Assembly: GCA_035084275.1 (NCBI GenBank)
Contig: CM068764.1
Coordinates: 4,898,001-4,962,000 of the forward strand
Direction: 5' to 3'
From: Hydrolagus colliei
Taxonomy: Eukaryota
Length of the DNA: 64,000 bases
The position numbers and the translations under genes are program-made. The notes beneath the pieces are model-generated. The model did not search any database. It saw only the letters and a list, made by a program, of their open reading frames with translations, and was not told the origin of the DNA. Of this stretch, positions 20,401 through 58,748 are shown one piece after another (within the stretch, counting starts at the first letter, position 1; every line of letters begins with the position of its first letter).

Positions 20401-23400
20401 AACAGCCCTCACACAGGATGGTGTCCCAGAGCGCTTTTCAAGGAGCCCATTTAAAAAAGCATCTTGATGCTACGATGGGAGGGCTGAGATCAGATGGGAG
20501 GAAGGGCCTTCTTCATCCCATGTGATCTTGTATACATCCTTTTTTAGAAATGTGTTGGTTGTATCCAATGCATTTTCAGTGAACATCTGAGAAATTATCA
20601 AATTTTTAAATAATAATTCTTGCATTTGATACAGCGCTTCATCAAGTCTTCACGATATCCTACATTATAATGTGAATTGACTGTATATTTTGTGGGTGTA
20701 AATTACCTGGATTCTGTGGCCCTCTTCCATCTCAAGCTACGTTCATGGGTTTTCTGTTGCATGTTGAGCTGGCTGCATCTCCCTATAGTAACATTTCTTC
20801 TTTCTCTCTCTCTCTCTCTCTTCTCTCTCTCTGTGTTGCTTGCTCTCTAATCCTCAGCAACAGGCAAAGATGCTGAAGAGCCCGGTGAAGAGAAGATCTG
20901 GCCTCTTCCCTCGATCCCTTGCCGGCTCGGACGGACAATCAGACGGCCGCCCGCGATGGTGAGTGTGATGGTGGGGGTGGGGGGGCAGTAGAAACCTGTA
21001 GCATCAACTTGCATCTTTACAATGCCTTGTTGCGTATCAAAGAACATCACGGCAGAAGCCTGAAAATATTGAGGTCCATCCACGAGAGACCGATTCATCT
21101 GGAGGATTGCTAGCCAGGAATCGGTCTTCAGATCACAAGCTCCGTTCAGATAAAGAAGGCTTTTCGGCCCATCTGATCTCATGGCTCCAAAACACCCACC
21201 CTACTGTTCTGCCATCACAGCTTCGAGCTATATGTTTTTAATACTGTTCATTTAAATGAGTCCCAGCATCCCAGCCTCAACCGCCTTTGCTAGTAACCTG
21301 CACCAATTGTTAATCAGTCTCTGGGTTGTTTGGAGTTGTCTGGTCTGAAATTGCACCTTTGCAAACTGCACACCCCCCACCACACCTTTTTCTACTGCTG
21401 TGCGGTTGGGGGGCGGGAGGGGCATGAGATCAGATGAGCCGAGATGTCTCAGAAGCGGTGATTGGTTGGAGATGAGTTTCTCCGTCCAACTCCTCCGAGA
21501 CGTCTCCTTTTCAACGTCTCCTTTTCAAGATTTAACTGCGTCTAATTGTTTAGACCTCAGTGTAGTTTAGAGTGACCCTCATTTTCCCCTGGCCTGTTCC
21601 TTGCTTGGTGTCCACTACTTCTGGAGGATTGCTGGCCAGGAATCAGTCACTTTGGCCACTGTAAAGCACTCAGTTCTTCTTCTAAGTGAAGAGTGCAAAA
21701 ATGAATACAAGTAGTTGGATGCTCTCTGCCCTAAGATTATTATTTTTATAGTTACCAACGGGATAGATCATGACCCCAAGAGCCAGACACTCAGACAGTA
21801 GAGTGTATATATTCCTGACATACATCTCACTGGTTACTTGGGTCTGCTAAATGCAGTCACAGTTTATTTTTAGTTCTTCAATCACTTGGCCTGTCACTTT
21901 TTAACAAATGATGCCCGTGGCTAAATCGAGCTGCTTAACCAGCCTGCAGATCGCTGCACCTAATGAGGAGTTTAATCATCCTGGATAAAAATGAGTTCCT
22001 CCAGTCAGTCAGTCCCCAAACTGACTTGAAAGATCATGGCCTCAGTCGGGGCAGTGATTTGAGATCCCACCTGGCTTTACCCAGACGGTTTGGCTTTTGG
22101 GAGAATAACTTTACTTAAGGGATATTGTTCACAGAAATAGTATCAATAGTTTCCCACCAGTCACTCTTAGCAAATCATGGATGGTTTCAGACTCGTTACT
22201 TTTAGAATTTAAAAGTAGTGAAACGAGAGCACAGAGTACAAATTACAGCCGGTTCCTGACTTGCGAAATTTTCTTAGCATTTTGGAGCTCAGAATGTGGA
22301 CAAATTCTCAATGAATCTTTTAATTTGGAAAATGCGCACATTCCGAAACATTAAGAAAATAGTCTTAAGCCTAGTTGGAATCTCTCTTTCCCCTACCCAG
22401 CCTCCATTGTCTGTCAGTTTGTTTATCTGTCTGTCTGTGCGTATGCTCGGTGCAATTCAAATTCCCTATTGGAGAACAATTCCTGCTGCAAACTACCCTC
22501 TTGATTTTTTTTTATTTGCTTTGTTTTATTTTGTTCAAATCCATTTGTCAAGTTTCCCTTTTTATTGTTTTCCGTCTGTGTATTGCGCCTGAAGCTTTTG
22601 AGCTTTCCCTGACCTGCATTGGGCTTCACTGGGGCCGAGAGATCTCGTAAATGTCAGATTTCTCTGCTTCATCTCCAACCCTGCAAGATTCAGTAAGAGC
22701 TGAACGCATACTTGACACTGAGCCAGACTTCCACTTTGCTATTGAGTGTGACTGAGGGATTTTTCTGCTTTCAGCATGAATCAGATGGGATATACAGTAA
22801 TGAGGGGTTTCCAGTGTCCCACAAACAGTGGTGGATTGAGTGAACAAATTATTATTTTTAAAACAAAATTTGAAGGGATTATTCCCCCCCCCACCCTCCA
22901 GCCCCTGGAAAAGCAATCTGCTAATTAACTGATAACCAAGTTCCTACTTTCTTGCTGGGTAAATGGAGGATGTGTGGAGAAAGGAACGTGCCTAATGTTT
23001 TGGCCTGTCCGGGAATCGAACCCAGGTCTTCTCACTTGATATATGAGAGAAATGACATCTCTCATACTCCTGTATGAGACAAAATGATAGCTTTTTCAGA
23101 GATGCAGCAAATTCCTCATGCACTGAATATTAAACGCTGTAAGTTTCTATTGTTCTACTCGGGAGTTGTTAATTTTTTTCATTGTATTGATTTTTTTGTG
23201 TGTGTGCGCGCGACAGTGAAAGCTTGTCAAGTTTACCGAGGACGCCCGAGTGTGGCCAAATCTCACAGGAAGTCAAATGGGACACTTCCTCCAATCCCAG
23301 CTCGCCCGAAATGTGCCCCAACAAAGACAGGTAATGCCAACTGCCGTCAGCCCGGTCTCTCTCTAAATAACCGCAATCCTCGAGCCAGCGCCGCGAGGCC

Positions 23401-26400
23401 GGAATAGCCCTAAATGCTTCACGGAGAATTGCCATCAAGCGTTTGGAAGCAACCCCAAAAAAATTAACGGCCATTTTATACTTGTGGGAGGGTTATTAGC
23501 TAGGACCCGGGGGGGAAACTTTCCCTTCATTTTTCAGGTACTTCATGGGATCTAACAATGCAGTGTTTCCTCCAAGACCGTACTGGTCTGGAGGCTTTAA
23601 CCTCAGAGGCTCACGACCTCACCAGAGAGAGAGGGGAGAGTGCTAACCACAGCAACTCAGCTGTGCTCGAACCTGAGGAAGAATAGGATTAGAAAGAACT
23701 TGCATTTTTACCGAACGCCATCTCAAAGATGTTGCTTCACAACAAGCCCACCAGGGCGCAATGATATCCTTTGAGTATGTGACCGCAGCATCAATCGAAT
23801 GTCCTCATTTATCTGAGCAAACAAACGCCGTGAACGTGCCTGGTACCAACACAGCTGCGGTACTGAAGGAAAGCCAGGAAAGTGCATAGACCAAATTGAA
23901 CAGAGCGAATGGGAGCCTAAGCACTGATCGTCAAATCCTGACTGTGTGCGAGAGAGAGAGAGAGAGAGAGTGGAGGGGGTTGGGTGGTGTCTGTGTGTGA
24001 GACCGAGAAAATGCAACTACTAAATGCAGTGCTCTTTATGTTTGTTTGAGGATGAAGGCAACTTATCAGCAGTGACATATCCAGACTGAAATGTGTTTCT
24101 TGCCTGACTCCTGAGAAATGCGATTCATCTGATTCCTTGTATCGACAAAGCACCTGACCTTTTGAATCAGGATCGCCTCTGTCATCTATTTGATCCTATC
24201 TGCGCCATTTTCATTACACTGGGCAGCGTTGGGTTTATGACGGACGCTGGCTTTAATTGCGCTCCTTTTGAACCCCCTCGGGTTCCTCTCCAAAGTAAAG
24301 TGAAAGTCAACTTTTGACCAGGTGTTTTTCTCCCCCCCCCACCCCTCCCCTCCCTCCCACCCCACCACCACCCCTGTCTTTCCTCCTACTCACCAGGATC
24401 TTCAATAAACTCAAGGAGAACGGGAGGGACAACATCTCGCGCTCTTCGTCAAGTACCAGCAGCTTCAGCAGCACGGCCGGGGAGAGCGAGGCAATGGAGG
24501 AGTACGAGACCAGTGCAGTAAGTCCTCCCACAGCACCACGTCTCAGGGCGGGGGGGGGGGGGGGAAGATTAAAGACCCTTGTGCCTTGGGGAGTTACAAT
24601 AATAATCATCATCAGAATCTTCATAATCCTTGCGTTTGATACAACACCTCACCATACCTTTTGAGGTGTCTCAAAGCACTTTACAGGATATACTGTAAAG
24701 TGGATTTGGCTGACTCGATATTTTCTTGGAGGAGGAAAGGGCTGCTGAGATAGATACGTGTGTTGCGAGATCAGAGGGAGTTTCGTTGAGCGTTGAATTA
24801 TTTGGGGTTCCTTACCACCATCTTTTGCTGCTTGGAAGACCTTCCTGGGGGTGGTGGTGGTGGGGGGGGGGGGGGGGGAACAAAACAAAAACCTCTCTCT
24901 TTGACTGCGCCTTCACCGCCCCCACTCACACATACCTTTCCGCCATTTCCCCACCCCTGCCCGGGATCCATCTGTGTCTCTGAGCAGCACTTGGAGACGC
25001 TTTCCTCATGTGAAAGACACTGTGCAAGAGCCAAGTTTGGGATAACAACATAACTTTCATCGTTGTCGGGTCCCTGATGGTGGTGGAGAAGTTGAAGACG
25101 GGAAAGAATACCGTTTGTTCCCCCCCATGGGGAAAAAAAATATTTTTCGATCCAATTCCTTGGAATGTTATTTTCTTATTGTTATTGATATGTTTTTTTT
25201 GTTGCTTTGTGTTTGCGTTTTGTAATCTTTCTTCATCACCACCAATTTCTTTTTTGCTCAGGGAAGCCAGACGTCAACGGCTTCTCCTTTCCGACAGGAT
25301 GTTTTTCTCTACAGCCCGTTGGGGACCAATGAAAACCAAAACGTCATCACTTCCTGCAAGAGCCCCACAGGTCTGCACATAGCACCTCAGTGTCTGCCTT
25401 CATACAGACACATACCCCCCCCATACACACACACCCACCCACCTCCCCATATGTATACACACACACAACAAACATGCATATACACACACACGTACACAAA
25501 TGCCATGTGTGCACGCACATGTGCTTCGATACATGCACACCCTCCCTGCATACTAGCACACACGCATGTGTGCCCACAGGCTAGCGCACATACACACCAC
25601 ACACACCATCCCCATCAACCTGACAACAATATCAATACTTACGTGCCTGTACACAGCGCCTTTCACAAAGGAAATCCTGTCCAAGCGGAGTGTGTGCGAG
25701 TGGGAGTTAGTGATGGCTTCTGACTAAGACTCTGTCAAAGAGAGATTTTTTAGATGGGTTTTGAAAGCAGGGGGAGGGTGGCCAGGAATAGGGGGATTTA
25801 GGGATAAAGAGATCGAGGTCACCGGTGTCACTGAATCCTTGGCCCTGGAGACAGGATATTTGCCGCACCTATCACAGTGAGCCCAGAGTGTACTGATGAC
25901 AATAAGACTTGCATTAATATCTAATGCAAGTCTTATTGTCATCAGTACACTCTGGGTGACTTATCATTGCCATCGAGGCGTCTCAAAGGTCTTCAAGATT
26001 TTGGTGTAAAATACTGTGGCTGTGGAGGAGCGCAAATTTGCGCAGAGCGGAGTTTGCCAGGACAACTGTGTGGTGAATGACCAAATCTATCTGGGGAATT
26101 GGCAACCGGAAGAGAAAGATACTTCCTGCTTTTTCTGAGTACGTAGTGCCACAGGAACTTTTACGTCCATCTGGACAGGCATAGGCAGTTCCATGGTTTA
26201 ACATCTCATCCAAAGGATGGTACCTTTCACAATGTGTCACTTCCTGACACCATGGCCCATTAAGCACTTCACTGGATCCTAGACTGTGAGTGCAAAGTCA
26301 TACTAGGAACATAGGGAACAGGCCACTCAGCCCCTCAAGCCTGTTCCACCATTCGATTAGATCATGGCTGAACTCCAATCAACTCAACTCCAATCACCCA

Positions 26401-34771: not shown

Positions 34772-36230
34772 CCTTAGAAAATATAGCTTGAAAAACACCC
34801 TGTAGACAAACACATACATCGCTGGCCTTTGTATCAGCCGACATCTGGTCGAATCGCAACAGTGGCATGAAATGTATTTATTTTATAAATGAATACATTT
34901 TGAACAATTCACTTACAATAAAAACAGAGGGAGGAAATATATGGTTTTTTTTAATTGATACTTAACTTTCCAACAGAGATAAAAAGAAATGTCCCTGATA
35001 TTGGCAAACTCTCTTGCCCTCATCCTTGGCACACAAACTTAATAAACTTAATGACGTTTCATTTGTGCTCAGCCGGGTTTCATGTTGTCGAGGCATCTCA
35101 AAGCGCTTCACAGAATATACCGCGAATATGAAGTGACTGTGTACTTTGTGGCCAAAACTATACACCCATCGCAACAAGAAGAAATTCTGTGACGTCGCAG
35201 GCGCTTTGTGTCCAGAGACCTACTTTTTTAAGGAGTTCTGTGCAGTTAATGTCGCAGCATTCTCAGTCTCTGGTATCAATGTAAATCCGGTCACCAATCC
35301 GACTCCATTAACATAGCTGGTGGCCTTCGCTCTTGTGGCTCAAGCTTCGTGAGGAATTAACATCCTTCGATTGGGGGAATGGGGGGAGAAAGAAATCACA
35401 AAGCAGCAAATAGCGTTCCTACTATCTCAGCTCAGTCACACCTGGTGAGAAGACAAAGAGGGGGAAGAGTCATTCTGATCTCAGTAGCCTCGAGCCAATG
35501 TTTGTTCCATTCACTTCCAATAACAATGATAGTAAATCTTACAGTTAACGTGGCGCCTTTCGCATCAGAGGACACTCTGTACAGTATACCCCGTGGTATT
35601 TTGTGGGCAAACTTGTTTGAAACCAGCTGACACAATATGAGTTAGCCGATTTAACATAGTGTTGTGGAAATACTCAACTGCCGTGGACGTGTTATCTGGA
35701 GATCCCAATCTCTGTCTGTTTTTCAAACACAGCCTTAAAACAACAACAATTTGCATTCTTCATGTGGTGCAGCGGCCAGGAGCGCTTAAAACCTACTCCC
35801 TTCAACTGCACATACGGTCACCTCCCTCTTGCCTCCAATCTCAACTGTCTCACATTAGACCTGTGATCTGTTCTGGCTGATCTAGGATCAGTATTCATCA
35901 GAGTTTCACAATCGGTATAACAACACAACAACAAAATTACATTTGTCTAGCGCCTTTCACGTCAGGAAGATGTCCCAAGGCGCTGGACAGTTACTGCTTC
36001 AGACCTGAGCTGAGGACGAACGGATGGACGGACGGGGGAGGAGGAGGGAAGGAGTAGGGGATAAGGAGTTGCTGATGTGTCCATTAAAGAGGAGAGTCTT
36101 GAGACGAGACTTGAAGGAGGCCAGGGAGGGGGCGAGGCAGAGGGACTACAGGATGTATAAAGTATAAAGTGAAACCGCACTCATTGCACAGAGCTCTTCC
36201 AGACACTCACCCCGAGTCTTGCCCAAAGCT

Positions 36231-36245
36231 TTAGTACGGCTTCTT
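36231..36245 (-). CDS. TAPBPL: Tapasin-like exon 8 coding part (KKPY*)
   Basis: ctttttctttctcttttcaacag|AAG AAG CCG TAC TAA. Confidence 0.8.
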   Translation of the reverse strand, partial: KKPY

Positions 36246-39200
36246 CTGTTGAAAAGAGAAAGAAAAAGAGAGCATTGTGTTGAGTTTCTGTTAAGAGAGA
36301 AATCGCATCGGAACGTCTCTCCGCCCTCTGCACTTAATTAACGTTGAGTGGATAAAGTGATCATTTTGTGGGACAGCTTAAATAAATAACACAATAATCC
36401 TAGCGATAAAAATCCTAAAAGTATTCACGATGATATCGGAAAGCCCTTCACAGGATATACTGCGCAGGATATTAACTGCGGATTTATATGCAAACACACC
36501 AGCTAATTTGCACACAGCAATGTCCCACAACACAGCCATGAAGTCAATGTCCTATTTTATCAGTGGGATTGGGGGGGGGGGTGGGGGGTGTGGGGGGAGT
36601 TCTTAGCCCATTTCTTTTCCGACAGAGCCCACAGGATCTTTAATTTTCACTTAAACAGGCGCAGAATTGGACCTCGGTTGTATCATCTCAACCATAATAC
36701 ACAGCACCTCCGACAATGTGGCGCTCACACAGCCAAGACTACATTTCACCACTAGAATGATTGGGGGAAGACACTGTGAGGGGACCTTTGGGATTTCACC
36801 AATGAATTTCACCCTCTGCGTTAGCGTTAGCTCTTACTAACCAACATAGGTTTCACGAATCGAGTAAGAAAACCAAAAAGGCGTTGGCTTTTACCTTGTT
36901 CCTTTCCCTGCCTGTGAAGGAAAAAGATAAAGAGAATGGTCAAAAAGTTCACATCGGCACGATTGCATCCTGCCGGCAAGGAGAGGGTCATGGGAATCGC
37001 ACTCTTCCTTTCACTGGTACATCTTTTCATTCACGGTGCGGTGGACTTAGCCAGCCGTAATCCTTAGCGATAAACACTCTCTCAAAGTCATGTGCCGCAA
37101 CGTCATTGGAGTTTTGTGACGAGGATTTTCACGGTGGGAGTTTTACATCGAAATAAAATGTTGGTTGAGTCTGCGTTCGTACATTTTTGCGGAAATTGCC
37201 CATTTCCTCCAGTTCTTGGTGTGTAACAAAGCACGCCTTGGAGTAAATGATGGAAAAATGCTGTGAATGTTGTCGAGCCTTCGAAAGAGGCCCATAAAAT
37301 GGCGAGTCCGGTTTGAGGCTAATTATCAACTTAAACCAACAGAAATGTATAGCTCAGAACGATTATTTGCTCCAGCCTTGATTCACGGTAAGATCTATCT
37401 GTTCAGTCCAATTCTCATGCCTCTCCCACAGCCTTTCATACTTCTCTTGTGTTGACGCTTATCTACTCCCCTCTTTAAAGCTACCAGTGATTCTCCGTGA
37501 CCACAGTTTTAGGAAGAGTATTCCGCAACCTAACTGTCCTTTGTGTTTAAAAACAAACTGTTCTTCTGAAATCTCCCTTTCCTCTTTTTGGCAAATCGCT
37601 TAAATCTCTGGCTTCTGACCCACCTACCAGTGGAGATAATTTCTCCCGGTTCATTCCATCAGAACCCAATCTGGCTCCAATCTTTTCTATGTGCAGATAC
37701 TCACCTTTGCTCAAGAAGCAAATCAGAACGATGAAGACAGTAACGAGGACAACAATGAGGGCGATGATGCTGAACCAAATGAGGAAAGCTGCTATGCCCG
37801 GAGGTCGAGCTGTAACATTTTGAGGCAAATTTTCAAACAACAGCAAACAAAGACAAATATTTTCCAAATGCAAAATGGGGTAATTTTTCACAACTACATG
37901 CTTTTAAAATGAGAGGTACGCCACAAGAATATATCAACAATAATCCTTGCTTTTCACGCGTCACAGTGCGTGACAGAATTCACTCTAAAGTGCGCTCGCT
38001 CCATGGTCGCAAAGTGAAGTGTTTGAGATTTGAGTTTCGAACAACCTACAAAAATTACATTAACCCTCCCTCCCCCCGCCTCCCTCCCACCACTTCCCTC
38101 CGCTTCCTGATCTGGGAGCTGTTTATTATATCATTCTAATTACTCGCAAACAACCCGAGCCCCCATGACCCCACTCCCAGCTCACCCCACCCCACCGAAC
38201 CCACCCACCCCACCCCACCCCGCCTGTGCTGTGCGCTTACGCTTCACGATGACGGGGACCGATCGTTTGATGGTTTTCTTGAGGCTGAGGTGGTCGACGC
38301 GACACGTGTACAGGGCTCCGTTGTCCTTGAGCGACGCCCGGAACCTCAGGAAGCTGGTCAGGTTGAAGGTGCCGTCCGCGTTCCTCCGGTGGGGCGAGAA
38401 GACCATGTTCTCTAGGTAATCGGGCAGCATGTGTTGCCCCTCCCAATGCCGCAGCCACCTGACCGACACATCCAGAGGGTAGTAACGTGCCATCTCGCAC
38501 GTCAGCTTCCGCTCCTCGCCGTCCGTCAGCTGGAGAGGCTCAGTGTTCATCTGCACGATGGGCGATTCTGCCAGGGAAACCGTTGAGAACCGTTTCATTT
38601 TGTTTTCGAAGGTTTTATTGAGGAACAAGCGCAAGAAAACCACACCATCGATTGGGTCCCTTGCTACGTGTTTTCGCCTTGGCCACTAATACTGCGTGTC
38701 TTCAAACTCCTCATACCCCATTACTCTGCTCGCCTCCCCTTTCCCTCCGGCTACGCCATCTGAACCCCCTTCACTTTATCGTTCTGTCTCGCCTCTCCCT
38801 TTCTGTATGAAAAGTGCACCTATAATAATAATAATTCTTTGAATTTGATATAGTGCCTTCCTTATAAATATGTAAATATATATACATCAATCATTCTCCC
38901 TCTTTGTTCACACGCACTGTCACCTCTCTTCTCCCCCTTAACCTCCTCGCCAGGCATCCAAAAAACGTTTAGCCGACAAAAAAATCACAGAAATCACAAA
39001 ATATCACAGATTAGCGCTCGGTCAAAGCAAACTGCACCTCCTCCAATTGTCCAAGTCTTCTAGATGCGTCAAAGTGCGTCACAGTAAAGTGAATTGACTG
39101 TATATTTGTGAGCAAAACACAGCAGTCAATTGTGCACAGCAGCGTCCCACAAACAATCGTGGATTGAAGTGACCAAATTATAATTGTTTGTTTTAGTGGT

Positions 39201-42200
39201 TTCATAGGTTGTTGAATTGGAATGCACACTCTCTTCTTGTAGGGACGCATCTTGCTTACCTAATGCTAGAGGGCTTGCTTCTCGTCCCCCAACCTTGCCT
39301 GCCCCACGAATGAAGCGTGGGCCTTTCATCCCACAGTCCCTACACCTCACTCCCTCCCTTGCCTCCCTTAAGGTCTGTATCAAGACGCTCCTCTTCGACC
39401 GTGCCTTTGGTCACCTTCCTACCCCAACCCTCAAAGCTCTCCGCCCCTCCTGATCCTAACCACCAACTCGGGTGCAGAACCCTGACTGCCCAATGCCTCG
39501 GGACATCCTCCTGACGTGAAAAGCGCTACGCTAAACTCGAGCTATTGACGTTGTAGGTGAGCAAGAGCCGAGTCTTAAGTTCCCAGGTGACCTTACCCAC
39601 AATCTCCAAGAGGACAGTGTTCGTGCCAAAGAGCGGGGGGACGTAGACCGAGCAGATGTAGGTGCCCTCGTCTTTGATGGCCACGTTCTGGATGCGGATG
39701 GAAGCGTTCCCGTTCTTGATCTGCTCCTCGAAGGCTGTGACCCCCGGCTCCAGGTGCTCGACCTGGCGGTGTCGCCCATTGTAGGAGAACAGCTTGGTCC
39801 TCACTCTCTTGTGCTGGTGCCGCCATTCGATGTTGACATCGGCGCTGTGGTCGATCTTGTAGCCGCAGTCCAGCATCACGTCTTGCTTAAGGTTGGCTCG
39901 GATCAACGGGGTGCTTGTGCGGACAATGTAGACCACTGGGGGGGGGGGGGGCAAAAAAGACCAATGGACAGCGTCCAAAGTCATTGGGATTGGAAACTTT
40001 CTCTCTGCTTCATCGTGCAGCCCGGATATAATAATATTGTAATGATAATAATAATACTACTACTCACTGCATTCAATACAGCGCCTTATCATGCAAGTAA
40101 AAGATATAATAATAATAATAATCCTTGCATTTGATATAGCGCTTTTCACATTTTATCAACATCCCAAAGCGCTTCACAGAATATACTGTAAAGTGAATTG
40201 ACTGTATTTATTTGTGGGCGAATCGTGGCAGCCAATTGCGCACAGCAGTGTCCCACAAAACAGTCGTGGGCTGAAATGGCCAATTTTATTATTGTGGGTT
40301 TTTTTTGGAGGAATTATTATTAGGCGTGTGGAGTAAGGAAACTTGCCCAAGGTTTCGCCCTGACCTGCCTGGATTCGAACACAGGTCTCCCCAGCTTGGG
40401 TCTCCTCAGCTTGCAAGACAAGTGCTCTAACCACTGAGCCACAGGAGCTCCATATACAAAGTATTTCCTTATACTCATCGTCATGCATTGGCATCTCGTA
40501 GAGTCATAGTTGGAATACTCGCCTCGCGAGCGAGAGGACCTGGGTTCGATTCCCCCACCAGTGGGGAAACCTTATGCAAGTTTCCTTACTCCAAAAGTCT
40601 GTTTACTCAGCAGTAAGTGGGAACCAGGTTGTTAGTGGATTGGCGGATGGCTTTTACCAGGGGTAATAGTTTGCATTGAATTTTTTTTTTTAAATAGTAA
40701 TGATTTGGTCTCTCAATCCACGGCTGTTTGTGTGATACTGATGTGCTCCTGAGGTTCAACCACAAAATACCCAGTGAACCCACTTAGCAGTATTTTCTGT
40801 GAAGGGCTTGTGAAATGTTTCAATGGCGTTATGAGGCACTATATCAAACACATGGATTATTATTATCATGTCAAGCCCCCAAATACACCCACACCCACAC
40901 GCAAGTCACACATCCCTTTGGTGGGCTCCTTAGCTGCTTGCGAACATTACCTTTAACCAGCAGAATGTCCATGTCACCAATTGGCGAATCCTCATTTTCC
41001 TCTTTCGTTCCATGCTCAGCTGCCTCCTGGCTCTCTGACTCTGGCACCTTCCTCAAGAAGCTGCTGGTGATGAACTTGTCATCGGTGTGTTTGATGGTCA
41101 CCACGAACCAGCGGTTGAATAAATTCTCATCGAGCTCCTTACCCTGTTCAGGCCAAGGCACGTGAATGCCGTGAGTAGAATAGCGTTTGACTTCACACTC
41201 CAACTGCCTGCTTTCTCCTCCCACGTACTGGAACATGTCCAGCGAGGGCTCTGCAAAAACACAAGGCAAAAATCCACCTGCTTGTTGGATCGACAGAAGA
41301 CAACGCGGATTTGCAAGGCACGGAGAGCAAGGAGAAAATATCTGCAACCACAAGCAGCCAAAGATTGTTGTACCCGGAAAGCAGTTCACTTTACAGGGGG
41401 TAATAATGCCTCCCCAAAAATTGGTTACTCAACCCGCAACTGTTTGTGGGACGATGCTGGGCGCAATTGGCTACTGTATTTCGCCCACAAAATACAGTCA
41501 ACCCACTTTACAAGATATCGTGTGAAGCAAGCGCTTTGAGACTTCTCAATGACGTGATAAAGCGCTATATCAACTGATTATTATTAATATTGGCATAGCT
41601 TGGAGCTTTAATAACTCTCAAATTCAATATAAGCATCTCTTCATGTCATCAAAGTATCTCAAAACCCTTACTATTAAATGTAGTGATTGTATTTGAGGAG
41701 AAACACTACATAGGGTTAAATACAGTGCACCAGAGGTCCTCGGGACATATTGTTAGAACGCGTTAGCGAAGCGTGAATTTAATCCCTACGCCGTACGTAC
41801 CTTTAACATTGAAGGTGATGGCATTTTCTTGCTGTGAGTCCTCTGCCCCCATATCGCCAAAGACCAGGATGGCCTTCCTCCGGATGATTTCTGGGGCAAA
41901 CATGGTTCCGACTTGGGGACCATCTTCCATAAAGGTGCAGTCCAACTTCCTCTGCTGTCCATGCTGAGCATGTGCAGAACCTAAACATGGAGGAGATGAG
42001 GAGTCTTGAACAAGGCCTGAGTCAGACCACATTGTCTGGCTCGCTCAGCATATTGAACACCAAACATCCAGTGTATTAATAATAAGAATCCTTGCATTTA
42101 ATATAATAATAATCATTGCATTTTGATATAGCGTTGTTCAAGTCTTCCAGACGTCTCAAAGCGTTTCACAGAATATATTGTAAAGCAAATTGCCTGTATA

Positions 42201-45200
42201 TTTATGGATGAAACGCGGCAGCCAATTGCGCACAGACATAGCGACTTATCACGTCGTTGGGGAGTCTCAAAGCGCCTCACAGTATATTCGGTGAAGCTCT
42301 TTGAGACGTTTTGAAGACATGATGAGGGGCTACAACAAATGCAAGGATTGTTATTATATGATACAGTGGATTGACTGTATTTCTGTGAGTGAACGCAATA
42401 TTGCAGCTTTCAATGCTATTTTTTGGAGAATGATCGAGGGTCTTGCCTGCCCTGCCTGCCTCTGTGGCACAAATCAAAAAGCAGATGTAAGTTTTTCCCA
42501 GTGTCCTGGCCATCAATCCCCCAAATCATATTGGTCATTCACTTCAGGGCTGTTTGTGTGTGCGTCAATCCTGCGCGCAAAATTGGCTGCCCACATGAGC
42601 GGCTGTTTTTCAGACTGGAGGGAAGTGAGCAGTGGTGTGCCACAGGGATCAGTTTGGGGACCATTGCTGTTTGTAATCTACATCAATGATCCGGACTTGG
42701 GTGTACGGAGTACAGTTTCCAAGTGTGCAGATAACACTAAGTTAGGGAGAATAGTAAATAGTGAGGAGGATAGTAGCCATCTGCAAGAGGATATAGACAA
42801 ATTGGTAAAGTGGGCAGACACATGGCAGATGAAGTTTAATGCAGAGAAGTGTGAGGTGATGCATTTTGGGAGAAGAAATGAAGGGAGGCAATATAGGCTA
42901 GATAGTACAATTTTAAATGGTGTGAAGGAACAGAGAGACCTGGGGATTTGTGTTAGTGACTCGTTGAAGGTGGCAGGACAGGTAGACAAGGCTGTTAAGA
43001 AGGCATATGGGATACTAGGCTTTATAAATAGGGGTATAGAGTACAAAAGTCAGGAAGTGCTGACTAACCTCTATAAGGCTCAGCTGGAATACTGTGTTCA
43101 ATTCTGGTCACCACACTACAGAAAGGATGTGAAGACATTGGAAAGGGTACAAAGAAGATTTACTAGGATGGTGCCAGGATTGAGGGACTTCAGCTATGAG
43201 GAGAGGCTAGATAGGCTAGGGTTATTCTCTCTGGAGCAGAGAAGATTGAGGGGAGACCTAATAAAGGTTTATAAGATCATGAGGGGTTTCGACAGGGCAA
43301 ATAGAGAAAAACTATTTCCACTCGTGGTCACAGATTTAAAATAGTTTCAAGGCGAAGTAGAGGGGAGCTGAGGAGAAATTTTTTCACTCAGCGAGTTGTT
43401 CGAATCTGGAATGCATTGCCTGAAAAGGTGGTGGAGGCTGATTCGATAACAACTTTTAAAAGGGAATTAGATCTTTATTTAGGGAGAACAGGTCTATTAG
43501 GCTATGGGGAGCGGGCAGGGCAGTGGGATTAAATCGCTCTTTTCAAAGAGCCGGTACAGGCTACATGGGCCGAATGGCCTCCTTTTGTGCCGTAAAATTA
43601 TATGAATCTATGAATCTAGTAGAGGAAACACACAAAGCCTTTTGAGAACTAAGTTAATGTGCACGTTAAAGCTGACAAAGAATAAAGTGCGTTCTTACTA
43701 AAAAATAGATAATAATCCCTCAAGAAAAAAAAAATTTGGTAACTCAATCCACGACTGTTTGTGGGAGACTGCCATGCGCAATTGGCTGCCGCGTTTCGCC
43801 CACAAAAGATACAATCAATTCACTTTACAGTGTATTCTGTGAAACGCTTTGAGACGTCTAGAAGACTTTAAAAGTGCTACATCAACTGCAAGGATTATTA
43901 GTATTATTACTTATCAATAGCCAATGATTATACTTTACAGTAAAAGCTCTTTAAGTTGTTTTGACAACCCGACAGTTGCTAATATCAACAACAAGGATTT
44001 ATATTGCGCCCTCCAGCCCGGACGGGTCTCAGAGCGCTTCCCAGTAACGGATCCCGGGGCCGAGCCAGTGGGAGGGGAATGGTGACCGAAAGCGCGGTCG
44101 AAAAGAAAGGTCTTCAGTCGAGACCTGAAAGTAGAAAGTGAGAGGAAAGGGACGAAGCGAGGCGAAGGGAGTGAGGAAAGGAGTTCCAGAGCCTCCGGGG
44201 GGGGGGGTAATGGCTGAAGGCACGGCCGCCGATGGTAGAGTGGAGGATTCAAGGGATCGAGGGAGACCAGACCCAATGAAAGTTGATATCAAATTCATTA
44301 TCATATATACAGTATATAAATATATAGTGTAATTTTTGTTGTTGATATTGTTTAATAAGGTGTATTATTGTCTGACAACTGGCGTCCTGGGTAAAAATAT
44401 ATATTTTTTGTTCAAATCTGAATTAAAATTAATCTTTACTTGTGTTCTTGGGTTACAATAATAATCATAATAATAATAACCCTTGCATTTGATACAACAG
44501 CAACCACAAAAAAAATTACATTCAATATTTAATAATTTAACTGTACATTTGTGGGCGAAAACGCGACAGCCAAATTGCGCACAGCAGCGTCCCCCACAAA
44601 CAGTCGTGAAAATAGGGCCAGAAAGGGGGAAAAGAGGAAAGGGGGGAGAGGAAGACAAAGGTGGGAGGGGTGCAAGGGAGACAGGGAGGCAAGAGAGAGA
44701 GGGGTGCAAGGGAGAGGAGGGGGGCAAGGGAGAGAGGGGTGCAAGGGAAAAAGGGATGCAAGGGAGAGAGGGGTGCAAGGGAGAGAGGGGGCAAGGGAGA
44801 GAGGGGGGAAGGGAGAGAGGGGGGCAAGGGAGAGAGGGGTGCAAGGGAGAGAGGGGTGCAAGGGAGAGAGGGGGCAAGGGAGAGAGGGGGGCAAGGGAGA
44901 GAGGGGGGAGAGGGGGGCAAGGGAGAGAGGGGGGGCAAGGAAGAGAGGGGGACAAGGGAGCGAGGGGGACAAGGGAGAGAGGGGGCAAGGGAGAGAGGGG
45001 GGCAAGGGAAAGAGGGGGGGAAGGGAGAGAGGGGGGCAAGGGGGAGAGGGGGGCAAGGGAGAGAGGGGGCAAGGGAGAGAGGGGGGAAGGGGGGGTGGAA
45101 ACAGTTCCTCTTGTGGACGGGGGCTGCTTTGGGAATCCAGAGTCGCCCCTGGTGTCAGCTCTGAGCCAAACACAGGCAGAAAACACAGAGTCCAAGCCAC

Positions 45201-45300
45201 ACACACACACACACACAACGTGAACGAATTACACGCCTGTGATGGCCTTACCTGGGGGGCAGAGGAGCCAAAGCTGCGAGAGCCAGATGGCAACAATCAT
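36231..45300 (-). CDS. TAPBPL: Tapasin-family protein (tapasin-related/tapasin-like), 443 aa type I membrane protein
   Basis: Exons on the minus strand: 45252-45300 (signal peptide [16 protein letters not shown]), 41801-41980, 40951-41250, 39597-39935 (IgV: LDCGY...IEWR...DEGTYICSV), 38241-38567 (IgC1: [17 protein letters not shown]...TYTC-like LYTCRVDH), 37705-37809 (TM), 36895-36911, 36231-36245 (KKPY*). All GT-AG and phase-consistent, 1332 nt. Domain order and YYPLDV/DEGTYIC motifs are typical of tapasin/TAPBPR. Orthology within the family is uncertain. Confidence 0.88.
36895..36911 (-). CDS. TAPBPL: Tapasin-like exon 7 (17-nt cytoplasmic microexon GRERNK)
   Basis: Strong tract tctctttatctttttccttcacag|, donor AAG|gtaaaa; converts phase 1 to phase 0. 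Confidence 0.75.
37705..37809 (-). CDS. TAPBPL: Tapasin-like exon 6 (transmembrane)
   Basis: gttacag|...[34 protein letters not shown]|gtgagt. Confidence 0.9.
38241..38567 (-). CDS. TAPBPL: Tapasin-like exon 5 (IgC1)
   Basis: ccctggcag|...ESPIVQ...VPVIVK C|gtaagc. Confidence 0.94.
39235..39530 (+). mobile_element. L2 LINE 3' fragment
   Basis: ...[12 protein letters not shown]... followed by gacgtgaaaagcgcta tail. Confidence 0.65.
39597..39935 (-). CDS. TAPBPL: Tapasin-like exon 4 (IgV)
   Basis: poly-C ccag|...VVYIVRT...LLEIV G|gtaagg. Confidence 0.94.
40095..40452 (-). mobile_element. Full-length tRNA-derived SINE (same family)
   Basis: A box tggctcagtggtt and B box gttcgaatcc on minus; L2 tail. 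Confidence 0.85.
40500..40865 (+). mobile_element. tRNA-derived SINE, inverted relative to 40095-40452
   Basis: B box GGTTCGATTCC at 40543-40553; gcaagtttccttactcc body; L2 tail. Confidence 0.8.
40951..41250 (-). CDS. TAPBPL: Tapasin-like exon 3 (N-domain part 2)
   Basis: ttttgcag|...EPSLDM...[18 protein letters not shown]...DILLVK G|gtaatg. Confidence 0.92.
41801..41980 (-). CDS. TAPBPL: Tapasin-like exon 2 (N-domain part 1)
   Basis: tgtttag|GT TCT GCA...[11 protein letters not shown]...ITFNVK G|gtacgt. Confidence 0.9.
42598..43618 (+). mobile_element. 5'-truncated CR1 LINE (defective RT C-terminus and 3'UTR)
   Basis: [20 protein letters not shown]...CADNTKLG (RT FADD-type motif decayed), [20 protein letters not shown]; ends in the CR1-type tandem tail TATGAATCTATGAATC. 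Confidence 0.92.
43980..44285 (-). mobile_element. L2 LINE 3' fragment (same subfamily as 9368 and 46415)
   Basis: [16 protein letters not shown]; tail gaagcgctctgagacc. Confidence 0.8.
44625..45095 (+). repeat. G-rich minisatellite (~19-20-bp unit GCAAGGGAGAGAGGGG(G/T)) in tapasin-like intron 1
   Basis: About 22 visible copies. Confidence 0.9.
45252..45300 (-). CDS. TAPBPL: Tapasin-like exon 1 (signal peptide)
   Basis: aacATG ATT GTT GCC...CCA G|gtaagg; hydrophobic leader; phase 1 fits exon 2. Confidence 0.85.
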
Positions 45301-45394
45301 GTTAGCCCAGCTCGCCCAGTGTGGCCGGGGATCGATCGCCCACCCAACCCCAACACCCAACTTGGGACTGGCTGACTGACCCCCCGGGGCGACT

Positions 45395-45445
45395 CTTTCG
45401 GTTTCAACAACACAACGCGGAAGAAAAAGAAAAGAAAACGAAACT
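45395..45445 (-). promoter_or_regulatory. Two ISRE/IRF-E elements upstream of the tapasin-like ATG
   Basis: GAAACCGAAAG on minus (plus 45395-45405) and GAAAACGAAACT on plus (45434-45445); both fit GAAANNGAAA; 95-145 nt upstream of the ATG. Confidence 0.7.
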
Positions 45446-45457: not shown

Positions 45458-45601
45458 NNNNNNNNNNNNNNNNNNNNNNNNNNNNNNNNNNNNNNNNNNN
45501 NNNNNNNNNNNNNNNNNNNNNNNNNNNNNNNNNNNNNNNNNNNNNNNNNNNNNNNNNNNNNNNNNNNNNNNNNNNNNNNNNNNNNNNNNNNNNNNNNNNN
45601 N
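45458..45601. other. Assembly gap (144 N)
   Basis: Run of n in the sequence. Confidence 1.
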
Positions 45602-48166: not shown

Positions 48167-48652
48167 TTAATGTAACTCGAGTCCTCCTCTGCTATAGTTT
48201 GCTTTGTTTTTGCGTGTGACTTCTTCGGCTTTTCTCTGCCTCCAGTCGCAGATGTCAGCAAATTCACATGAGCGACACTTCCACGCCTCTTCAATATCCA
48301 CCCCCTCGGCTGCTCTCTGCCCACTCCAGAAGGAAAAATAATTTGCCAGTTCTCTTTGCACCCACTCTTCCTGGAAGCACACCGCCTCCGCTCCGATGAT
48401 AGAGCTGTCCGCCTGGTAACAGTATTCTATCATCAGAGCGTCGATCTTGGGAATCTCCGAGTAGGTTAGATTCAGCAACACCAAATCTAGCAGGTCTCCA
48501 AACGCGTGCACAGTGAAGCCCGCCTTCTCAGCATGCTCAACAACCTCCGAGCCAAAGGCTTCCTCGGACCGCAAACGGAGATGGCGAAGGAGAGTGGCCT
48601 TGTCCACCTCACCTCGGATCATTGCCTCGAACAGACGTTTGTACACTCTGAC
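48167..48652 (-). CDS. EXO5: EXO5 last coding exon
   Basis: gttatcag|GTC AGA GTG TAC ... CxxCx5C ... TAA. Confidence 0.95.
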   Translation of the reverse strand, partial: VRVYKRLFEAMIRGEVDKATLLRHLRLRSEEAFGSEVVEHAEKAGFTVHAFGDLLDLVLLNLTYSEIPKIDALMIEYCYQADSSIIGAEAVCFQEEWVQRELANYFSFWSGQRAAEGVDIEEAWKCRSCEFADICDWRQRKAEEVTRKNKANYSRGGLELH

Positions 48653-51600
48653 CTGATAACGATGAGCATTCAGTGTCACTTGACAATAAACATTCAGTTA
48701 AAGTGATAGGATTCTTCCAACCAAATTCTGCAACATCTGCTTTCTACTCAAGGGAGAGGGTGGTCGGAAGGGGTGGGGGTGGGGGTGGGGGGGGGGGCTG
48801 CAGTGATCCTAAGGGGTCTATGGTTGGCCAGCAATTGTGCTGCAAGTGTTTCAAAGCAAAGCAAAACATATACAATGCCCCATCACTAGCCTATAAACTA
48901 CATTGCTGACTCCTTGTCAGGTACCAGGGCTGCCTGTCAATCATTTGTTAGGCCTGACATTCCCATACAACACTCAGTCAACTCAACTGCGGTAATAATT
49001 CCTTCTGAAAAAAATTATGATATTAATTTGGTCAATCACGACTGTTGTGGGACACAGCCGTGCTCTATTGGCTGCCGCATTTTGCCCACAAAATATACAG
49101 TCACCACACTTTATAGTGTATTCTGTGAAGCACCTTGAGACGCCTCAACCAGATTAAAAAAGTGCTATCTCAAATGCAAGGATTATTATTATTACTATAT
49201 TATTATAACACAACATAAAGCAAATACTACTGAGGAAATTATTTCATTTGCCAAATAGAATGGGAAATCACTATTGTTCCTATTTTCCAAAACAAACCAT
49301 AATGTTAAAAAAAAGTGAAGTCTGTAGAAGGAATTCAACAAAATATGGTGCTGTATCAGCTCAGATCTACGGTAACTTCTTGGAATTCTAAGTTATTTAT
49401 GTTTTTGTCTCATACACTGAGACATTAAAATGTTAAAATATTATAGTTGTAAGCAGATTAACTTCATCATGCTGAAAGTATTAAAGTCTCTTACTTTACA
49501 GAAATGGCTGTGAAGCTGTGACTGTTTTTATTAATAACGTTTGGAACTGTGCCCCTGGAGTTTCCAGTCTTATGCATTCTCCTTTGCCACCCTCTCACCT
49601 GTAAGTGATGGCTTTTCCTCTGGGCTGCGCCTGGCAACGATCGGTGGCTACGTGTTTTGAATTCACACAGCTCAAGTTTGCCCTTGGAATTATAACGCAG
49701 CTCATCAATTATCCCAACTAGGAAGAAGCCATCCAGCTCTCCAAATACGGGCATCTCACGCACAATCCCTCCTAAACACACAACAGCAACTTACATGTAT
49801 ACAGCACCCTTCATGCAGGGTAGCGTCCCAGAACACTTCACACAAACACATTATGACATTAAAGTACAACAGACTGCTCGACGACATTTATAATATTAAA
49901 GTTGTAACAAATGAGCCATTTTACAATTTTATTCCATACGAATTATTATAATAATAATTAGTATGCAGAGGCCAAATGTAAATGAGATATAGAATCGCGA
50001 TGCCATCACTGTTCCTTGGCTGAGGTGTGCGAATGTAGAAGATACTCCTTTACAAGCAGTGTTAGGATATTGTGCAAGGCGGAGGTGGACATAGGCACAT
50101 TCGAGGAGGATTTGAGATGAAATTTAAGACTGAAGAGGGGGGGAGACAGAGGGATAGAATTCCAGAGATCAAGGGTTTAGGAAATGAAGTTGGTCACTTA
50201 AGGCACTGCTGAAACAGCAAATGACAAGCAACAAGCCCGAGTTAGCTGAGCAGAGGGTCTGAGTGGAGCAGTAAGGTAGGACAAGATTGCAGCTAGATAG
50301 AGTGCTGACAAAATGTAGAATATTGCATTTATTATATGTAGAGGTTTGAAGAAAATCGAATTCCTTGTCTGCAGGTGCCATTACATACCCGTCTGCAAGA
50401 TTTGAATCATTGAGAGAAGATTAAGAAGTTTAATGGCCCAACTATCTTCCCGGCTTGTAACATTTACTGCCACAATGTCATGGACCTCCAGTTCTGGAAT
50501 GCATCAAATCAGACATAAATTAGACATTCTCATTAGACATAAGCACTTCACTAGAAAGCTTTGATAGTGGCATAACACTAACCAAAGTGCATGCAAACCA
50601 AACTAGATCAATTTAGGACATCTATCGCTTTAGGCAGATTGTTAGAAACCTGAAAAAGATCTTCTTTGAGAGCAGGCAGTTCAGCTCTTAGCATTATTCA
50701 ACAACGCGGCTTTATTGAATCGTGAAACAAAATACTGTACATGGGGATGGGGGAAGGGAAATCACTCTATAAAAACTGAAGTTCCACCCCGAACTCTTTT
50801 ACCTCCCCTTCGTGTTTCACCCCTTCCCAAACACTCCCCTCCCAGCTCGGGTCACACGCCTCTTGTTCAGCGCCTTAGGACGTCCTCCCGACGTGAAAGG
50901 CGCTCTATAAATGTAAATTGTTGTTGTTGTTGTTGAAGCCAATGGTGTGCAACAAGGAATTGAATTGCGTACTAAGCAACCTACTGGAAGATTCTTCGTC
51001 AATCAATGGAAAATGTTCTATCTTTTCTGAGGAGGCGTTAATACTGTACAGTACCCACACAACAGGCAGACACCATAAAGAACAAGTCGTAGCTCGATGC
51101 AGTATTAATTTTTTTAAACAACAAATCTCATTACAAATTGTTGCATGTCAAACCTCACTGACAAGTTAATCGCTGTACAGTATTACCTCTTGCCAGGTGT
51201 AGGTCGGTGCCCGCTTTCACAATTGGCAGCTCAGCTCGTAGCCTCTCAATCTGAGGCATTTCCATCCCATAAACCACTTGCTGCTCACACCACGCCTGTC
51301 TACTCAAGTGAGTCACACTCAAGTAAGTTAGGCCAAACTTCTCCATCGGTGTCCGTTTGTCCTGCTTTTGCTTTTTAGCGACTGTGCAGTCAGAGTTTGG
51401 AGCCCGGGCCTCTCCAGGCTCAGGTGACTGACTGATGGGTTGAGGCACATCCTTCCTATGATGAAGGGTTTCCCAATGTTAACTCTTCACGCACTGAAGC
51501 ATGCAAAGAATTCCAAAAATATTCTGTAGTATTGTCTTCTAGGTTTTGTCATCTGAAAACTACTAATTTCACATACTTTCTTCTGCTTTCATATCTCCGA

Positions 51601-55659: not shown

Positions 55660-58748
<3,089 letters not shown>

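What the first reader, a model, noticed from the sequence alone, without database searches (positions are those of the whole stretch)
36231..45300. Non-MHC tapasin-family gene with a KKxx ER-retrieval tail but no ERp57/UGGT1-type free cysteine or charged TM residue
The rebuilt 443-aa protein mixes features of the two mammalian paralogs. It ends NK-KKPY*, a classic dilysine signal like tapasin and unlike human TAPBPR. It has exactly six lumenal Cys (LDC/LEC, LDC/YIC, LTC/YTC), i.e. three pairs and no equivalent of tapasin C95 (ERp57) or TAPBPR C94 (UGGT1). The TM segment [25 protein letters not shown] has no charged residue for TAP-type docking. It lies among RAP1GAP2/LIAT1, not in an MHC region. 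Inference: an ER-resident MHC-I (or nonclassical class I) chaperone working outside the canonical peptide-loading complex, probably the third tapasin-like lineage I recall being reported in non-mammalian vertebrates. The KKxx motif is assembled from two tiny exons (17 nt and 15 nt coding), so splicing could toggle ER retention.
Basis: partly seen in the sequence, partly recalled or inferred. Interest (0 to 1): 0.75.

Follow-up and report, generated by a model that had tools for sequence, protein, structure and literature searches.

The report
Chimaera copy of third tapasin-like gene
This is an intact, expressed chimaera gene of the already described but functionally unstudied third branch of the tapasin family (helpers that load peptides onto MHC class I), so it is a sound but not new kind of find.

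Summary
An RNA contig from a close relative (96% nt identity) confirms each of the six junctions that blastn could place; exon 7 (17 nt) is too short to align but its sequence sits in the contig between exons 6 and 8. The contig also shows a ninth, 3'UTR exon.

The protein has the tapasin fold: N-domain, IgV, IgC1, TM helix. In a maximum-likelihood tree it falls, at 100/100 support, in a third clade separate from tapasin and TAPBPR. Both of those also have cartilaginous-fish members.

This clade is the 'TAPBPL' lineage that Grimholt described in 2018 for bony fish, frogs, birds and marsupials. That paper already noted an ER-retention signal in some members, the missing TM lysine and the non-conserved C95.

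New here:
- The tail K(x)KPY-COOH is kept in 25 of 26 lineage members.
- All 11 cartilaginous-fish proteins have exactly six lumenal cysteines.
- Parts of the gene order EXO5 > gene < Rap-GAP are kept in sharks, sturgeon and a bird.
- An ISRE-like element lies just upstream in 4 of 6 species.

Most likely role (inferred): an interferon-responsive MHC-I chaperone, returned to the ER by COPI, working without TAP or ERp57. It is a new member of a known kind, of moderate interest.

The parts
45434..45445 (+). ISRE-like element GAAAACGAAACT within a GAAA-rich run, about 50 nt upstream of the 5'-most transcript base and 134 nt upstream of the ATG. It borders the N gap at 45458-45601.
   Evidence: It is the only exact GAAANNGAAACT match in the 64 kb window (0.23 expected). 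GAAANNGAAAST also lies 53-90 nt upstream of the ATG in white shark, sawfish and sturgeon orthologues.
45252..45387 (-). Exon 1: 5'UTR plus ATG at 45300. Encodes the signal peptide [16 protein letters not shown](G).
   Evidence: Transcript L001 aligns to 45387-45251. GT donor.
41801..41980 (-). Exon 2: first half of the N-terminal tapasin-type domain. Holds C31 and an 11-residue loop (aa 37-47) with the hydrophobic tip M43-F44.
   Evidence: The profile alignment to human TAPBPR places this loop at the K22-D35 editing loop. AF2 strands 27-36 and 48-57.
40951..41250 (-). Exon 3: second half of the N-domain. Holds C95 (invariant CE motif) and an acidic low-confidence linker.
39597..39935 (-). Exon 4: IgV domain. 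Holds C200/C271, the E213-W-R215-x-Q217 motif and the sequon N253-A-S.
   Evidence: Pfam V-set, 5.6e-16, aa 188-275. Invariant and near-invariant columns. Sequon positions.
38241..38567 (-). Exon 5: IgC1 domain. Holds C313/C378, the S-x-H349-R motif and the sequon N358-L-T.
   Evidence: Pfam C1-set, 7.3e-17, aa 298-384. Also.
37705..37809 (-). Exon 6: connecting peptide plus an uncharged transmembrane helix ([29 protein letters not shown]).
   Evidence: AF2 helix 404-438.
36895..36911 (-). Exon 7: 17 nt encoding (G)RERNK. It supplies the Lys at position -5.
   Evidence: Its sequence is present in the transcript. A tiny exon of the same kind and phase is found in five other species.
36211..36245 (-). 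Exon 8: encodes KKPY plus TAA (36245-36231), then 20 nt of 3'UTR. It holds the lysines at -4 and -3 of the KKxx signal.
35105..35441 (-). Exon 9: 3'UTR only. The 3' end is not defined because the transcript contig stops in a repeat.
   Evidence: L001 positions 1458-1800 align to 35442-35105. AG acceptor at 35443-35442.

Best explanation
The gene is the holocephalan (chimaera) orthologue of the third tapasin-family lineage. Grimholt 2018 called this lineage 'TAPBPL' (TAPBP-like); NCBI names its members 'tapasin-related protein-like'. It should not be confused with the HGNC symbol TAPBPL, which means TAPBPR.

The product is a type I ER membrane glycoprotein. It has a signal peptide, a tapasin-type N-domain fused to an IgV domain, an IgC1 domain, an uncharged TM helix and a cytosolic tail of about 12 residues ending KKKPY-COOH.

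Shown here: gene structure, expression as spliced RNA in a close relative, fold, clade membership, conserved gene order, conservation of the tail, and an ISRE-like motif upstream.

Inferred mechanism:
- The lumenal part clamps an MHC class I (or class-I-like) heavy chain with beta2-microglobulin, as TAPBPR and tapasin do. It would use the conserved E-W-R-x-Q face of the IgV domain, the S-x-H-R loop of the IgC1 domain and a TAPBPR-length N-domain loop with a hydrophobic tip.
- The K(x)Kxx tail binds COPI, so the chaperone and any unstable client are returned from the cis-Golgi to the ER.
- With no basic TM residue it should not dock on TAP. With no unpaired lumenal cysteine it cannot form a disulfide with ERp57 or use a TAPBPR-C94-type contact with UGGT1. 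It would therefore act outside the canonical peptide-loading complex.
- Transcription is probably raised by interferon through the ISRE.
For: Gene model and transcript. Purifying selection against the relative's CDS: dN/dS 0.35, with 19 of 443 residues different.

Fold:
- Pfam V-set and C1-set.
- A lineage profile hits human TAPBPR at 1e-61 over positions 27-392 and tapasin at 2.5e-23.
- The AF2 model of the 95.7%-identical orthologue has mean pLDDT 85.8 and pTM 0.76.
- The top 15 Foldseek PDB hits are all tapasin or TAPBPR chains, E 6e-26 to 9e-21, with about 350-450 aligned columns.

Clade: IQ-TREE on 34 proteins gives L, R and T each as one clade at 100/100, 100/100 and 100/99. The window gene is sister to Callorhinchus P0002 inside a cartilaginous-fish subclade.

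Gene order: EXO5 lies upstream on the same strand in the window, white shark and sawfish. A Rap_GAP gene lies tail-to-tail downstream in the window, sturgeon and condor.

Tail: 25 of 26 L-lineage proteins carry KKxx or KxKxx. All 26 end K-P/H-Y. Only 1 of 11 TAPBPR proteins has such a motif. The split into two tiny terminal coding exons is conserved in five other species.

Cysteines and TM.

ISRE. Salmon TAPBPL genes are induced by interferon-gamma (PMC7573153).

Conserved contact motifs: W214 is invariant, and R215 and Q217 are nearly invariant across the L lineage plus bird and reptile TAPBPR. I270 aligns with TAPBPR I261.
Against: - No binding partner, subcellular location or activity has been measured for any member of this lineage in the literature I could search.
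- TAPBPR Q272, part of the TN6 patch, aligns to T281 here, so the interface is not fully conserved.
- The IgV-IgC1 pair scores as well against the cell-surface NK ligand B7-H6 as against TAPBPR (1.1e-25 versus 2e-25).
- One teleost-clade member (P0159) has REKPY, which is not a canonical dilysine motif.
- The ISRE sits beside an assembly gap, so the promoter is only partly visible. The condor orthologue has a near-match (GAAAGCGAAACC) only at -427, and Megalops has none.
Confidence: 0.7

Rival explanations
1. It is simply the cartilaginous-fish TAPBPR (HGNC TAPBPL) orthologue, diverged enough to look separate.
For: By single-sequence phmmer it is far closer to human TAPBPR (2e-25, aa 123-398) than to tapasin (8e-12). 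NCBI names several orthologues 'tapasin-related protein'. The N-domain loop has TAPBPR-like length.
Against: The shark Heptranchias perlo has both a third-lineage protein (P0003) and a separate TAPBPR-clade protein (P0184). The same is true for coelacanth, lungfish, sturgeon-group fish, Denticeps and the caecilian Rhinatrema. The two clades are each 100/100. The gene order here differs from the 12p13-type neighbourhood reported for tapbpl (cd4, lag3, C-type lectins; PMC10751288). The C94 equivalent is absent, while a dilysine tail is present.
Confidence: 0.02
2. It is a B7-H6-like or B7-like cell-surface ligand for an NK-cell or T-cell receptor, not an ER chaperone.
For: The best single-sequence PDB hit is B7-H6 (1.1e-25), followed by CD276. 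A paper proposes a surface co-inhibitory role for human TAPBPL/TAPBPR (PMC8103088, listed). IgSF clustering puts NCR3LG1 next to TAPBP/TAPBPL (PMC13262535).
Against: The B7-H6 match covers only the IgV-IgC1 part (aa 214-391). The protein also has the 160-residue tapasin-type N-domain, and full-length structural matches are to tapasin and TAPBPR only. The K(x)KPY-COOH tail has been kept across all jawed-vertebrate classes sampled, which fits a COPI retrieval signal. The 12-residue tail has no signalling motif.
Confidence: 0.08
3. It is an ER-resident chaperone of the tapasin fold, but its client is not MHC class I. The client could be another IgSF or beta2-microglobulin-associated protein, or it acts in general quality control.
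For: No client is known for this lineage. The lineage was lost in placental mammals although class I was kept (PMC5824609). The TN6 residue Q272 is not conserved.
Against: The E-W-R-x-Q motif, the GTYIC isoleucine and the S-x-H-R loop are conserved. From memory, these mark the MHC-I interface of tapasin and TAPBPR. The family appears together with MHC in jawed vertebrates (PMC13262535). Salmon copies are co-induced with class I pathway genes by interferon-gamma, and an ISRE-like promoter motif is present.
Confidence: 0.15
4. It is a decaying or non-functional paralogue.
For: The lineage was lost in placental mammals.
Against: The ORF is intact with canonical splice sites. It is transcribed and correctly spliced in a close relative. 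dN/dS is 0.35. It is 77% identical to Callorhinchus and 46-57% identical to sharks and rays over the regions BLASTP aligned (87-100% of the query).
Confidence: 0.01

Closest known systems
TAPBPL (TAPBP-like) sensu Grimholt 2018, BMC Evol Biol 18:25. This is the third tapasin lineage, named 'tapasin-related protein-like' by NCBI.
   Same: Same clade at 100/100 support. Same K(x)KPY tail, uncharged TM helix, eight-coding-exon layout with two tiny terminal exons, and Rap-GAP neighbour. It is the orthologue.
   Different: The published tree had no cartilaginous-fish sequence. The 'unique cysteine' in WFTC noted for TAPBPL is absent here and in all 11 cartilaginous-fish proteins, which have exactly six lumenal Cys. 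The paper said only 'some' members carry an ER-retention signal; here 25 of 26 do.
TAPBPR (gene symbol TAPBPL; PDB 5OPI, 5WER)
   Same: Same three-domain fold. Closest solved relative by sequence (profile E 1e-61). N-domain loop of the same length as K22-D35, with a hydrophobic residue (M43) at the L30 position. No TM lysine. Not MHC-linked.
   Different: Separate clade. No equivalent of the free C94. Has a dilysine retrieval tail, which 10 of 11 TAPBPR sequences lack. Has the GNAS sequon, which human TAPBPR lacks (ARDAS).
Tapasin (TAPBP; PDB 3F8U, 7QPD, 9RCV)
   Same: Same fold, with the top Foldseek hit at 6e-26 and TMt 0.70. A dilysine ER-retrieval tail. A GNAS sequon in the IgV domain, also present in Callorhinchus tapasin P0180.
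   Different: Separate clade. No basic residue in the TM helix, whereas tapasin sequences have LYGxLK/R. No unpaired lumenal Cys for ERp57. No MHC genes were detected in the 64 kb window, which was only partly annotated. Sequence similarity is much weaker (8e-12).
B7-H6 (NCR3LG1)
   Same: The IgV-IgC1 pair is about 26% identical, with E 1e-25.
   Different: B7-H6 has no tapasin-type N-domain and is a surface ligand. The match here covers only aa 214-391.

Membership tests
Tapasin family (TAPBP / TAPBPR / third lineage) | Lumenal architecture of N-terminal barrel domain fused to IgV, then IgC1, then a single TM helix | tested here: met
   Pfam V-set and C1-set. AF2 model pLDDT 85.8. The top 15 Foldseek hits are all tapasin or TAPBPR over about 350-450 columns.
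Tapasin family (TAPBP / TAPBPR / third lineage) | Conserved N-domain cysteine pair plus the Ig-domain disulfide cysteines | tested here: met
   C31 is nearly invariant. C95, C200, C271, C313 and C378 are invariant across 35 sequences. That these pair up as disulfides is inferred.
Tapasin family (TAPBP / TAPBPR / third lineage) | MHC-I contact motifs: E-W-R-x-Q on IgV (the TN6 patch), Ile of GTYIC (the TN5 site), S-x-H-R loop on IgC1. The residue list is recalled from Dong 2009 and Hermann 2013, not re-read here. | tested here: inconclusive
   E213, W214, R215, Q217, I270 and H349 are present and conserved. TAPBPR Q272 aligns to T281. Binding itself was not tested.
Tapasin family (TAPBP / TAPBPR / third lineage) | Binds MHC class I with beta2-microglobulin and catalyses peptide exchange | not testable with these tools
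   Needs biochemistry.
Third lineage (TAPBPL sensu Grimholt 2018) | Falls in the clade with gar, teleost, frog, bird and marsupial TAPBPL, apart from TAPBP and TAPBPR | tested here: met
   L clade 100/100, holding the window gene plus sturgeon, teleosts, lungfish, coelacanth, frogs, caecilian, condor and wombat.
Third lineage (TAPBPL sensu Grimholt 2018) | C-terminal K(x)K-P-Y-COOH tail encoded by two tiny terminal exons | tested here: met
   KKKPY here. 25 of 26 lineage members have KKxx or KxKxx. The exon split is conserved in five species. I propose this feature; the original paper does not define the lineage by it.
Third lineage (TAPBPL sensu Grimholt 2018) | Conserved non-MHC neighbourhood (EXO5 upstream, Rap-GAP gene convergent downstream) | tested here: met
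   Window. White shark and sawfish have EXO5. Sturgeon and condor have Rap_GAP. Not kept in the teleost Megalops.
Tapasin proper (TAPBP) | Basic residue in the TM helix for docking on TAP | tested here: not met
   The TM helix has no charged residue. Three of five T-clade sequences have LYGxLK/R, and alligator has an Arg nearby (LYGAAR).
Tapasin proper (TAPBP) | Unpaired lumenal cysteine forming a disulfide with ERp57 (human C95) | tested here: not met
   Six lumenal Cys, all at conserved paired positions. Grimholt notes that C95 is not conserved outside mammals either.
Tapasin proper (TAPBP) | Phylogenetic placement and linkage to the MHC | tested here: not met
   The T clade excludes it at 100/99. 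The neighbours identified in the window are a Rap-GAP gene, EXO5 and LIAT1; the window was not fully annotated, and I saw no MHC gene.
TAPBPR (HGNC TAPBPL) | Phylogenetic placement; a free cysteine equivalent to C94 | tested here: not met
   The R clade excludes it at 100/100. The ADC cysteine, replaced in the 5opi and 9c96 constructs, aligns to a non-Cys position.

The most novel reading that the evidence does not exclude
The third tapasin lineage forms a second class I editing module that is held in the ER and needs neither TAP nor ERp57. It was already present in the last common ancestor of jawed vertebrates. It would be dedicated to MHC-unlinked or nonclassical class I lineages, or to peptides that enter the ER without TAP. 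Its K(x)KPY tail would set a retrieval cycle different from that of tapasin and TAPBPR. Its loss in placental mammals would then mark the loss of a whole branch of antigen presentation.
Probability: 0.2. Interest if true: 0.65.

Novelty: new member of a known kind. Interest (0 to 1): 0.35.

Why it matters
Textbook class I peptide loading rests on two editors, tapasin and TAPBPR. Most jawed vertebrates other than placental mammals carry a third editor whose function nobody has measured.

Three results here bear on that:
- All three lineages coexist in cartilaginous fish.
- The third lineage has kept one gene neighbourhood, one exon layout and one COPI-type tail for the whole history of jawed vertebrates.
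- It carries an interferon-type promoter motif.

Together these argue that the three-way split predates the divergence of cartilaginous and bony vertebrates, and that the third gene has a distinct, selected ER function.

The results also give clear handles for experiment: the tail, the loop tip M43-F44, and the absence of TAP and ERp57 docking features. The window gene itself adds one more orthologue rather than a new kind of gene.

Tried and rejected
1. My first exon 5 donor was off by one base, which put stops in the TM exon. Moving it to the GTAAGC donor at 38241 fixed this.
My first coordinates for the orthologue were off by one. I then used L001:107-1435, which is 95.7% identical.
3. The second homologue search, with Rhea TAPBPR, returned almost only bird and reptile TAPBPR. 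It did not reach mammals, sharks or tapasin. The exhaustive profile search supplied those instead, although most of its top 150 hits were multi-Ig proteins.
4. A literature search for the run accession SRR6291258 found nothing, so the species and tissue of the transcript remain unknown.
5. Rfam found no RNA gene in 35-46 kb.
6. Pfam found no family for the LIAT1 ORF. The last homologue search identified it.
7. I could not find the TN5/TN6 residue lists in the papers I opened, so they are quoted from memory.
8. I did not resolve whether the Rap-GAP neighbour is RAP1GAP2 or RAP1GAP.
9. I considered and rejected a TAPBPR orthologue, a pseudogene and a pure B7-type ligand (see the rival explanations).


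Full report
**Observation**

The region holds a minus-strand gene. Translating the minus strand and placing boundaries at GT/AG sites gives eight coding exons:
- 45300-45252
- 41980-41801
- 41250-40951
- 39935-39597
- 38567-38241
- 37809-37705
- 36911-36895 (17 nt)
- 36245-36231 (15 nt including the stop)

The tail is SKGRERNKKKPY*. The six lumenal cysteines are C31, C95, C200, C271, C313 and C378. The TM helix is uncharged.

A Logan RNA contig (SRR6291258_3537, L001) from a close relative carries one continuous ORF. It aligns at 94-98.5% identity to exons 1-6, exon 8 and a 3'UTR exon, breaking at the predicted junctions. Exon 7 is too short for blastn, but its sequence is in the contig between exons 6 and 8, and the contig's ORF ends NKKKPY.

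The same contig shows a 5'UTR reaching to about 45387. It also shows an intron in the 3'UTR: exon 8 ends at 36211 and exon 9 runs from 35441 to at least 35105. The stop codon is 20 nt upstream of the last junction, so by the usual 50-55-nt rule (general knowledge) I do not expect nonsense-mediated decay.

Compared with the relative's CDS, 19 of 443 residues differ and dN/dS is 0.35.

**What the protein is**

- Pfam finds only V-set (aa 188-275) and C1-set (aa 298-384) domains.
- Single-sequence phmmer against PDB chains gives B7-H6 at 1.1e-25 (Ig pair only), TAPBPR at 2e-25 (aa 123-398) and tapasin at 8e-12.
- A profile of the lineage hits human TAPBPR at 1e-61 over positions 27-392, nearly the whole lumenal part, and tapasin at 2.5e-23.
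- The AF2 model of the 95.7%-identical orthologue has mean pLDDT 85.8 and pTM 0.76.
- Its top 15 Foldseek matches in the PDB are all tapasin or TAPBPR chains, E 6e-26 to 9e-21, with TM-score by target 0.63-0.76.

**Which lineage**

The first homologue search found:
- a Callorhinchus protein at 77% identity ('Tapasin-related protein-like');
- one orthologue per shark or ray species at 46-57%;
- coelacanth, sturgeon and teleosts at 34-47%;
- bird TAPBPR at only 27-32%.

The exhaustive profile search, followed by name look-ups, supplied lungfish, caecilian, frog, condor and wombat members ending in KPY. It also supplied TAPBPR from a shark (Heptranchias P0184), coelacanth, sturgeon, lungfish, caecilian, echidna and hippopotamus, and tapasin from Callorhinchus (P0180), paddlefish, caecilian, alligator and gecko.

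An IQ-TREE analysis (LG+C20+F+G4, 34 proteins, 467 columns) gives three clades. The third lineage has 100/100 support, TAPBPR 100/100 and tapasin 100/99. The window gene is sister to Callorhinchus inside a cartilaginous-fish subclade.

Several species have members in two clades, for example Heptranchias, Latimeria, Protopterus, Rhinatrema, Denticeps and Callorhinchus. The third clade is therefore a paralogue, not a divergent TAPBPR.

**Literature**

Grimholt (2018, PMC5824609) defined this lineage as TAPBPL in gar, teleosts, frog, turtle, birds and opossum, and reported its loss in placental mammals. The paper noted that:
- the TM lysine is missing;
- 'some' members have an ER-retention signal;
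- C95 is not conserved;
- TAPBPL has a unique cysteine 11 residues downstream.

No cartilaginous-fish sequence was in that tree.

Grimholt et al. (2020, PMC7573153) showed that interferon-gamma induces the salmon copies and stated that the function is unknown. Kaufman's 2022 review lists three family members in many non-mammalian jawed vertebrates. The shark MHC paper (PMC10751288) uses 'tapbpl' for TAPBPR, in the neighbourhood equivalent to human 12p13. I found no functional study of the third lineage.

**What this analysis adds**

1. *Tail.* 25 of 26 third-lineage proteins, the window protein included, carry KKxx or KxKxx. All 26 end K-P/H-Y. Only 1 of 11 TAPBPR proteins has such a motif. 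Four of five tapasins do, and three of those five also have a basic residue in LYGxLK/R of the TM helix; alligator has an Arg nearby.
2. *Exon layout.* The split of the tail into ...NK | xKPY* across two tiny exons, at the same place and in the same phase, is found in Megalops, white shark, condor, sturgeon and sawfish.
3. *Cysteines.* All 11 cartilaginous-fish proteins have exactly six lumenal cysteines. The WFTC cysteine of ray-finned fish and the condor is V or G in cartilaginous fish and the coelacanth.
4. *Gene order.* EXO5 lies upstream on the same strand in the window, white shark and sawfish. A Rap_GAP gene lies convergent downstream in the window, sturgeon and condor. The teleost Megalops has different neighbours.
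5. *Promoter.* The only exact ISRE core (GAAANNGAAACT) in the 64 kb lies at 45434-45445, about 50 nt upstream of the transcript's 5' end. GAAANNGAAAGT lies 53-90 nt upstream of the ATG in white shark, sawfish and sturgeon. My rough estimate is about 4e-4 chance matches per 100 bp. The element borders an N gap, which I did not fill.

**Mechanism (inferred)**

The E-W-R-x-Q motif on the IgV domain, the Ile of GTYIC and the S-x-H-R loop on the IgC1 domain are conserved. I recall these as marking the MHC-I interface of tapasin and TAPBPR.

The loop between the first two N-domain strands (aa 37-47) occupies the position of the TAPBPR K22-D35 loop. M43 falls where L30, the 'leucine lever', sits. Sharks have VF or VL at the same place.

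The sequon N253-A-S lies in the GNAS motif, which Callorhinchus tapasin also has. Grimholt 2018 links the corresponding tapasin glycan to calreticulin.

A Lys at -3 together with a Lys at -4 or -5 is the classical COPI retrieval signal (established knowledge). The paper on tapasin's double-lysine motif is cited.

With no TM charge and no free cysteine, docking on TAP or a disulfide with ERp57 is unlikely. I therefore read the protein as an interferon-responsive class I chaperone or editor that is retrieved to the ER and acts outside the peptide-loading complex.

Skipping exon 7 would shift the frame and remove the dilysine. No such isoform was seen.

**Verdict**

The gene kind was already described in 2018, and orthologues are already annotated in shark and Callorhinchus genomes. 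It is a new member of a known kind, of moderate interest.

Noticed in passing
window 48170-51478 (minus strand): An EXO5 (exonuclease V) gene in at least three coding pieces (51158-51478, 49494-49790, 48170-48697). Its C-terminal end reads [10 protein letters not shown]. The same adjacency is found in white shark and sawfish.
   Followed up: partly
window 58218-58745 (+): A single long ORF that is 83% identical to Callorhinchus LIAT1.
   Followed up: partly
window about 13500-24500 (+): Exons of a Rap_GAP-domain gene, convergent with the tapasin-like gene. Whether it is RAP1GAP2 or RAP1GAP was not resolved.
   Followed up: partly
window 44636-45092: A G/A-rich minisatellite in intron 1, with a 17-nt unit GAGGGGGGCAAGGGAGA repeated about 26 times. 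It produces long spurious ORFs on both strands. A similar G-rich, ORF-generating stretch lies at about 62200-63850.
   Followed up: no
window 42295-43341 (+): A reverse-transcriptase fragment (Pfam RVT_1, 7.8e-10), probably a LINE remnant, inside intron 1 on the opposite strand.
   Followed up: no
window 45458-45601: A 144-nt N gap starting 13 nt beyond the ISRE-like element, so part of the promoter is hidden.
   Followed up: no
window 35105-35160, also about 526-569 and 49080-49132: The 3' end of the transcript contig runs into a dispersed repeat with copies elsewhere in the window (blastn 80-83% identity). The true polyadenylation site is therefore not defined.
   Followed up: no
P0010, P0013, P0157 (other species): Predicted isoforms of third-lineage orthologues lack the KKPY tail. 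Whale shark has a 397-aa form ending before the TM helix, and Narcine and Xenopus X2 have alternative C-termini. This could mean alternative splicing of the tail exons or annotation error.
   Followed up: no
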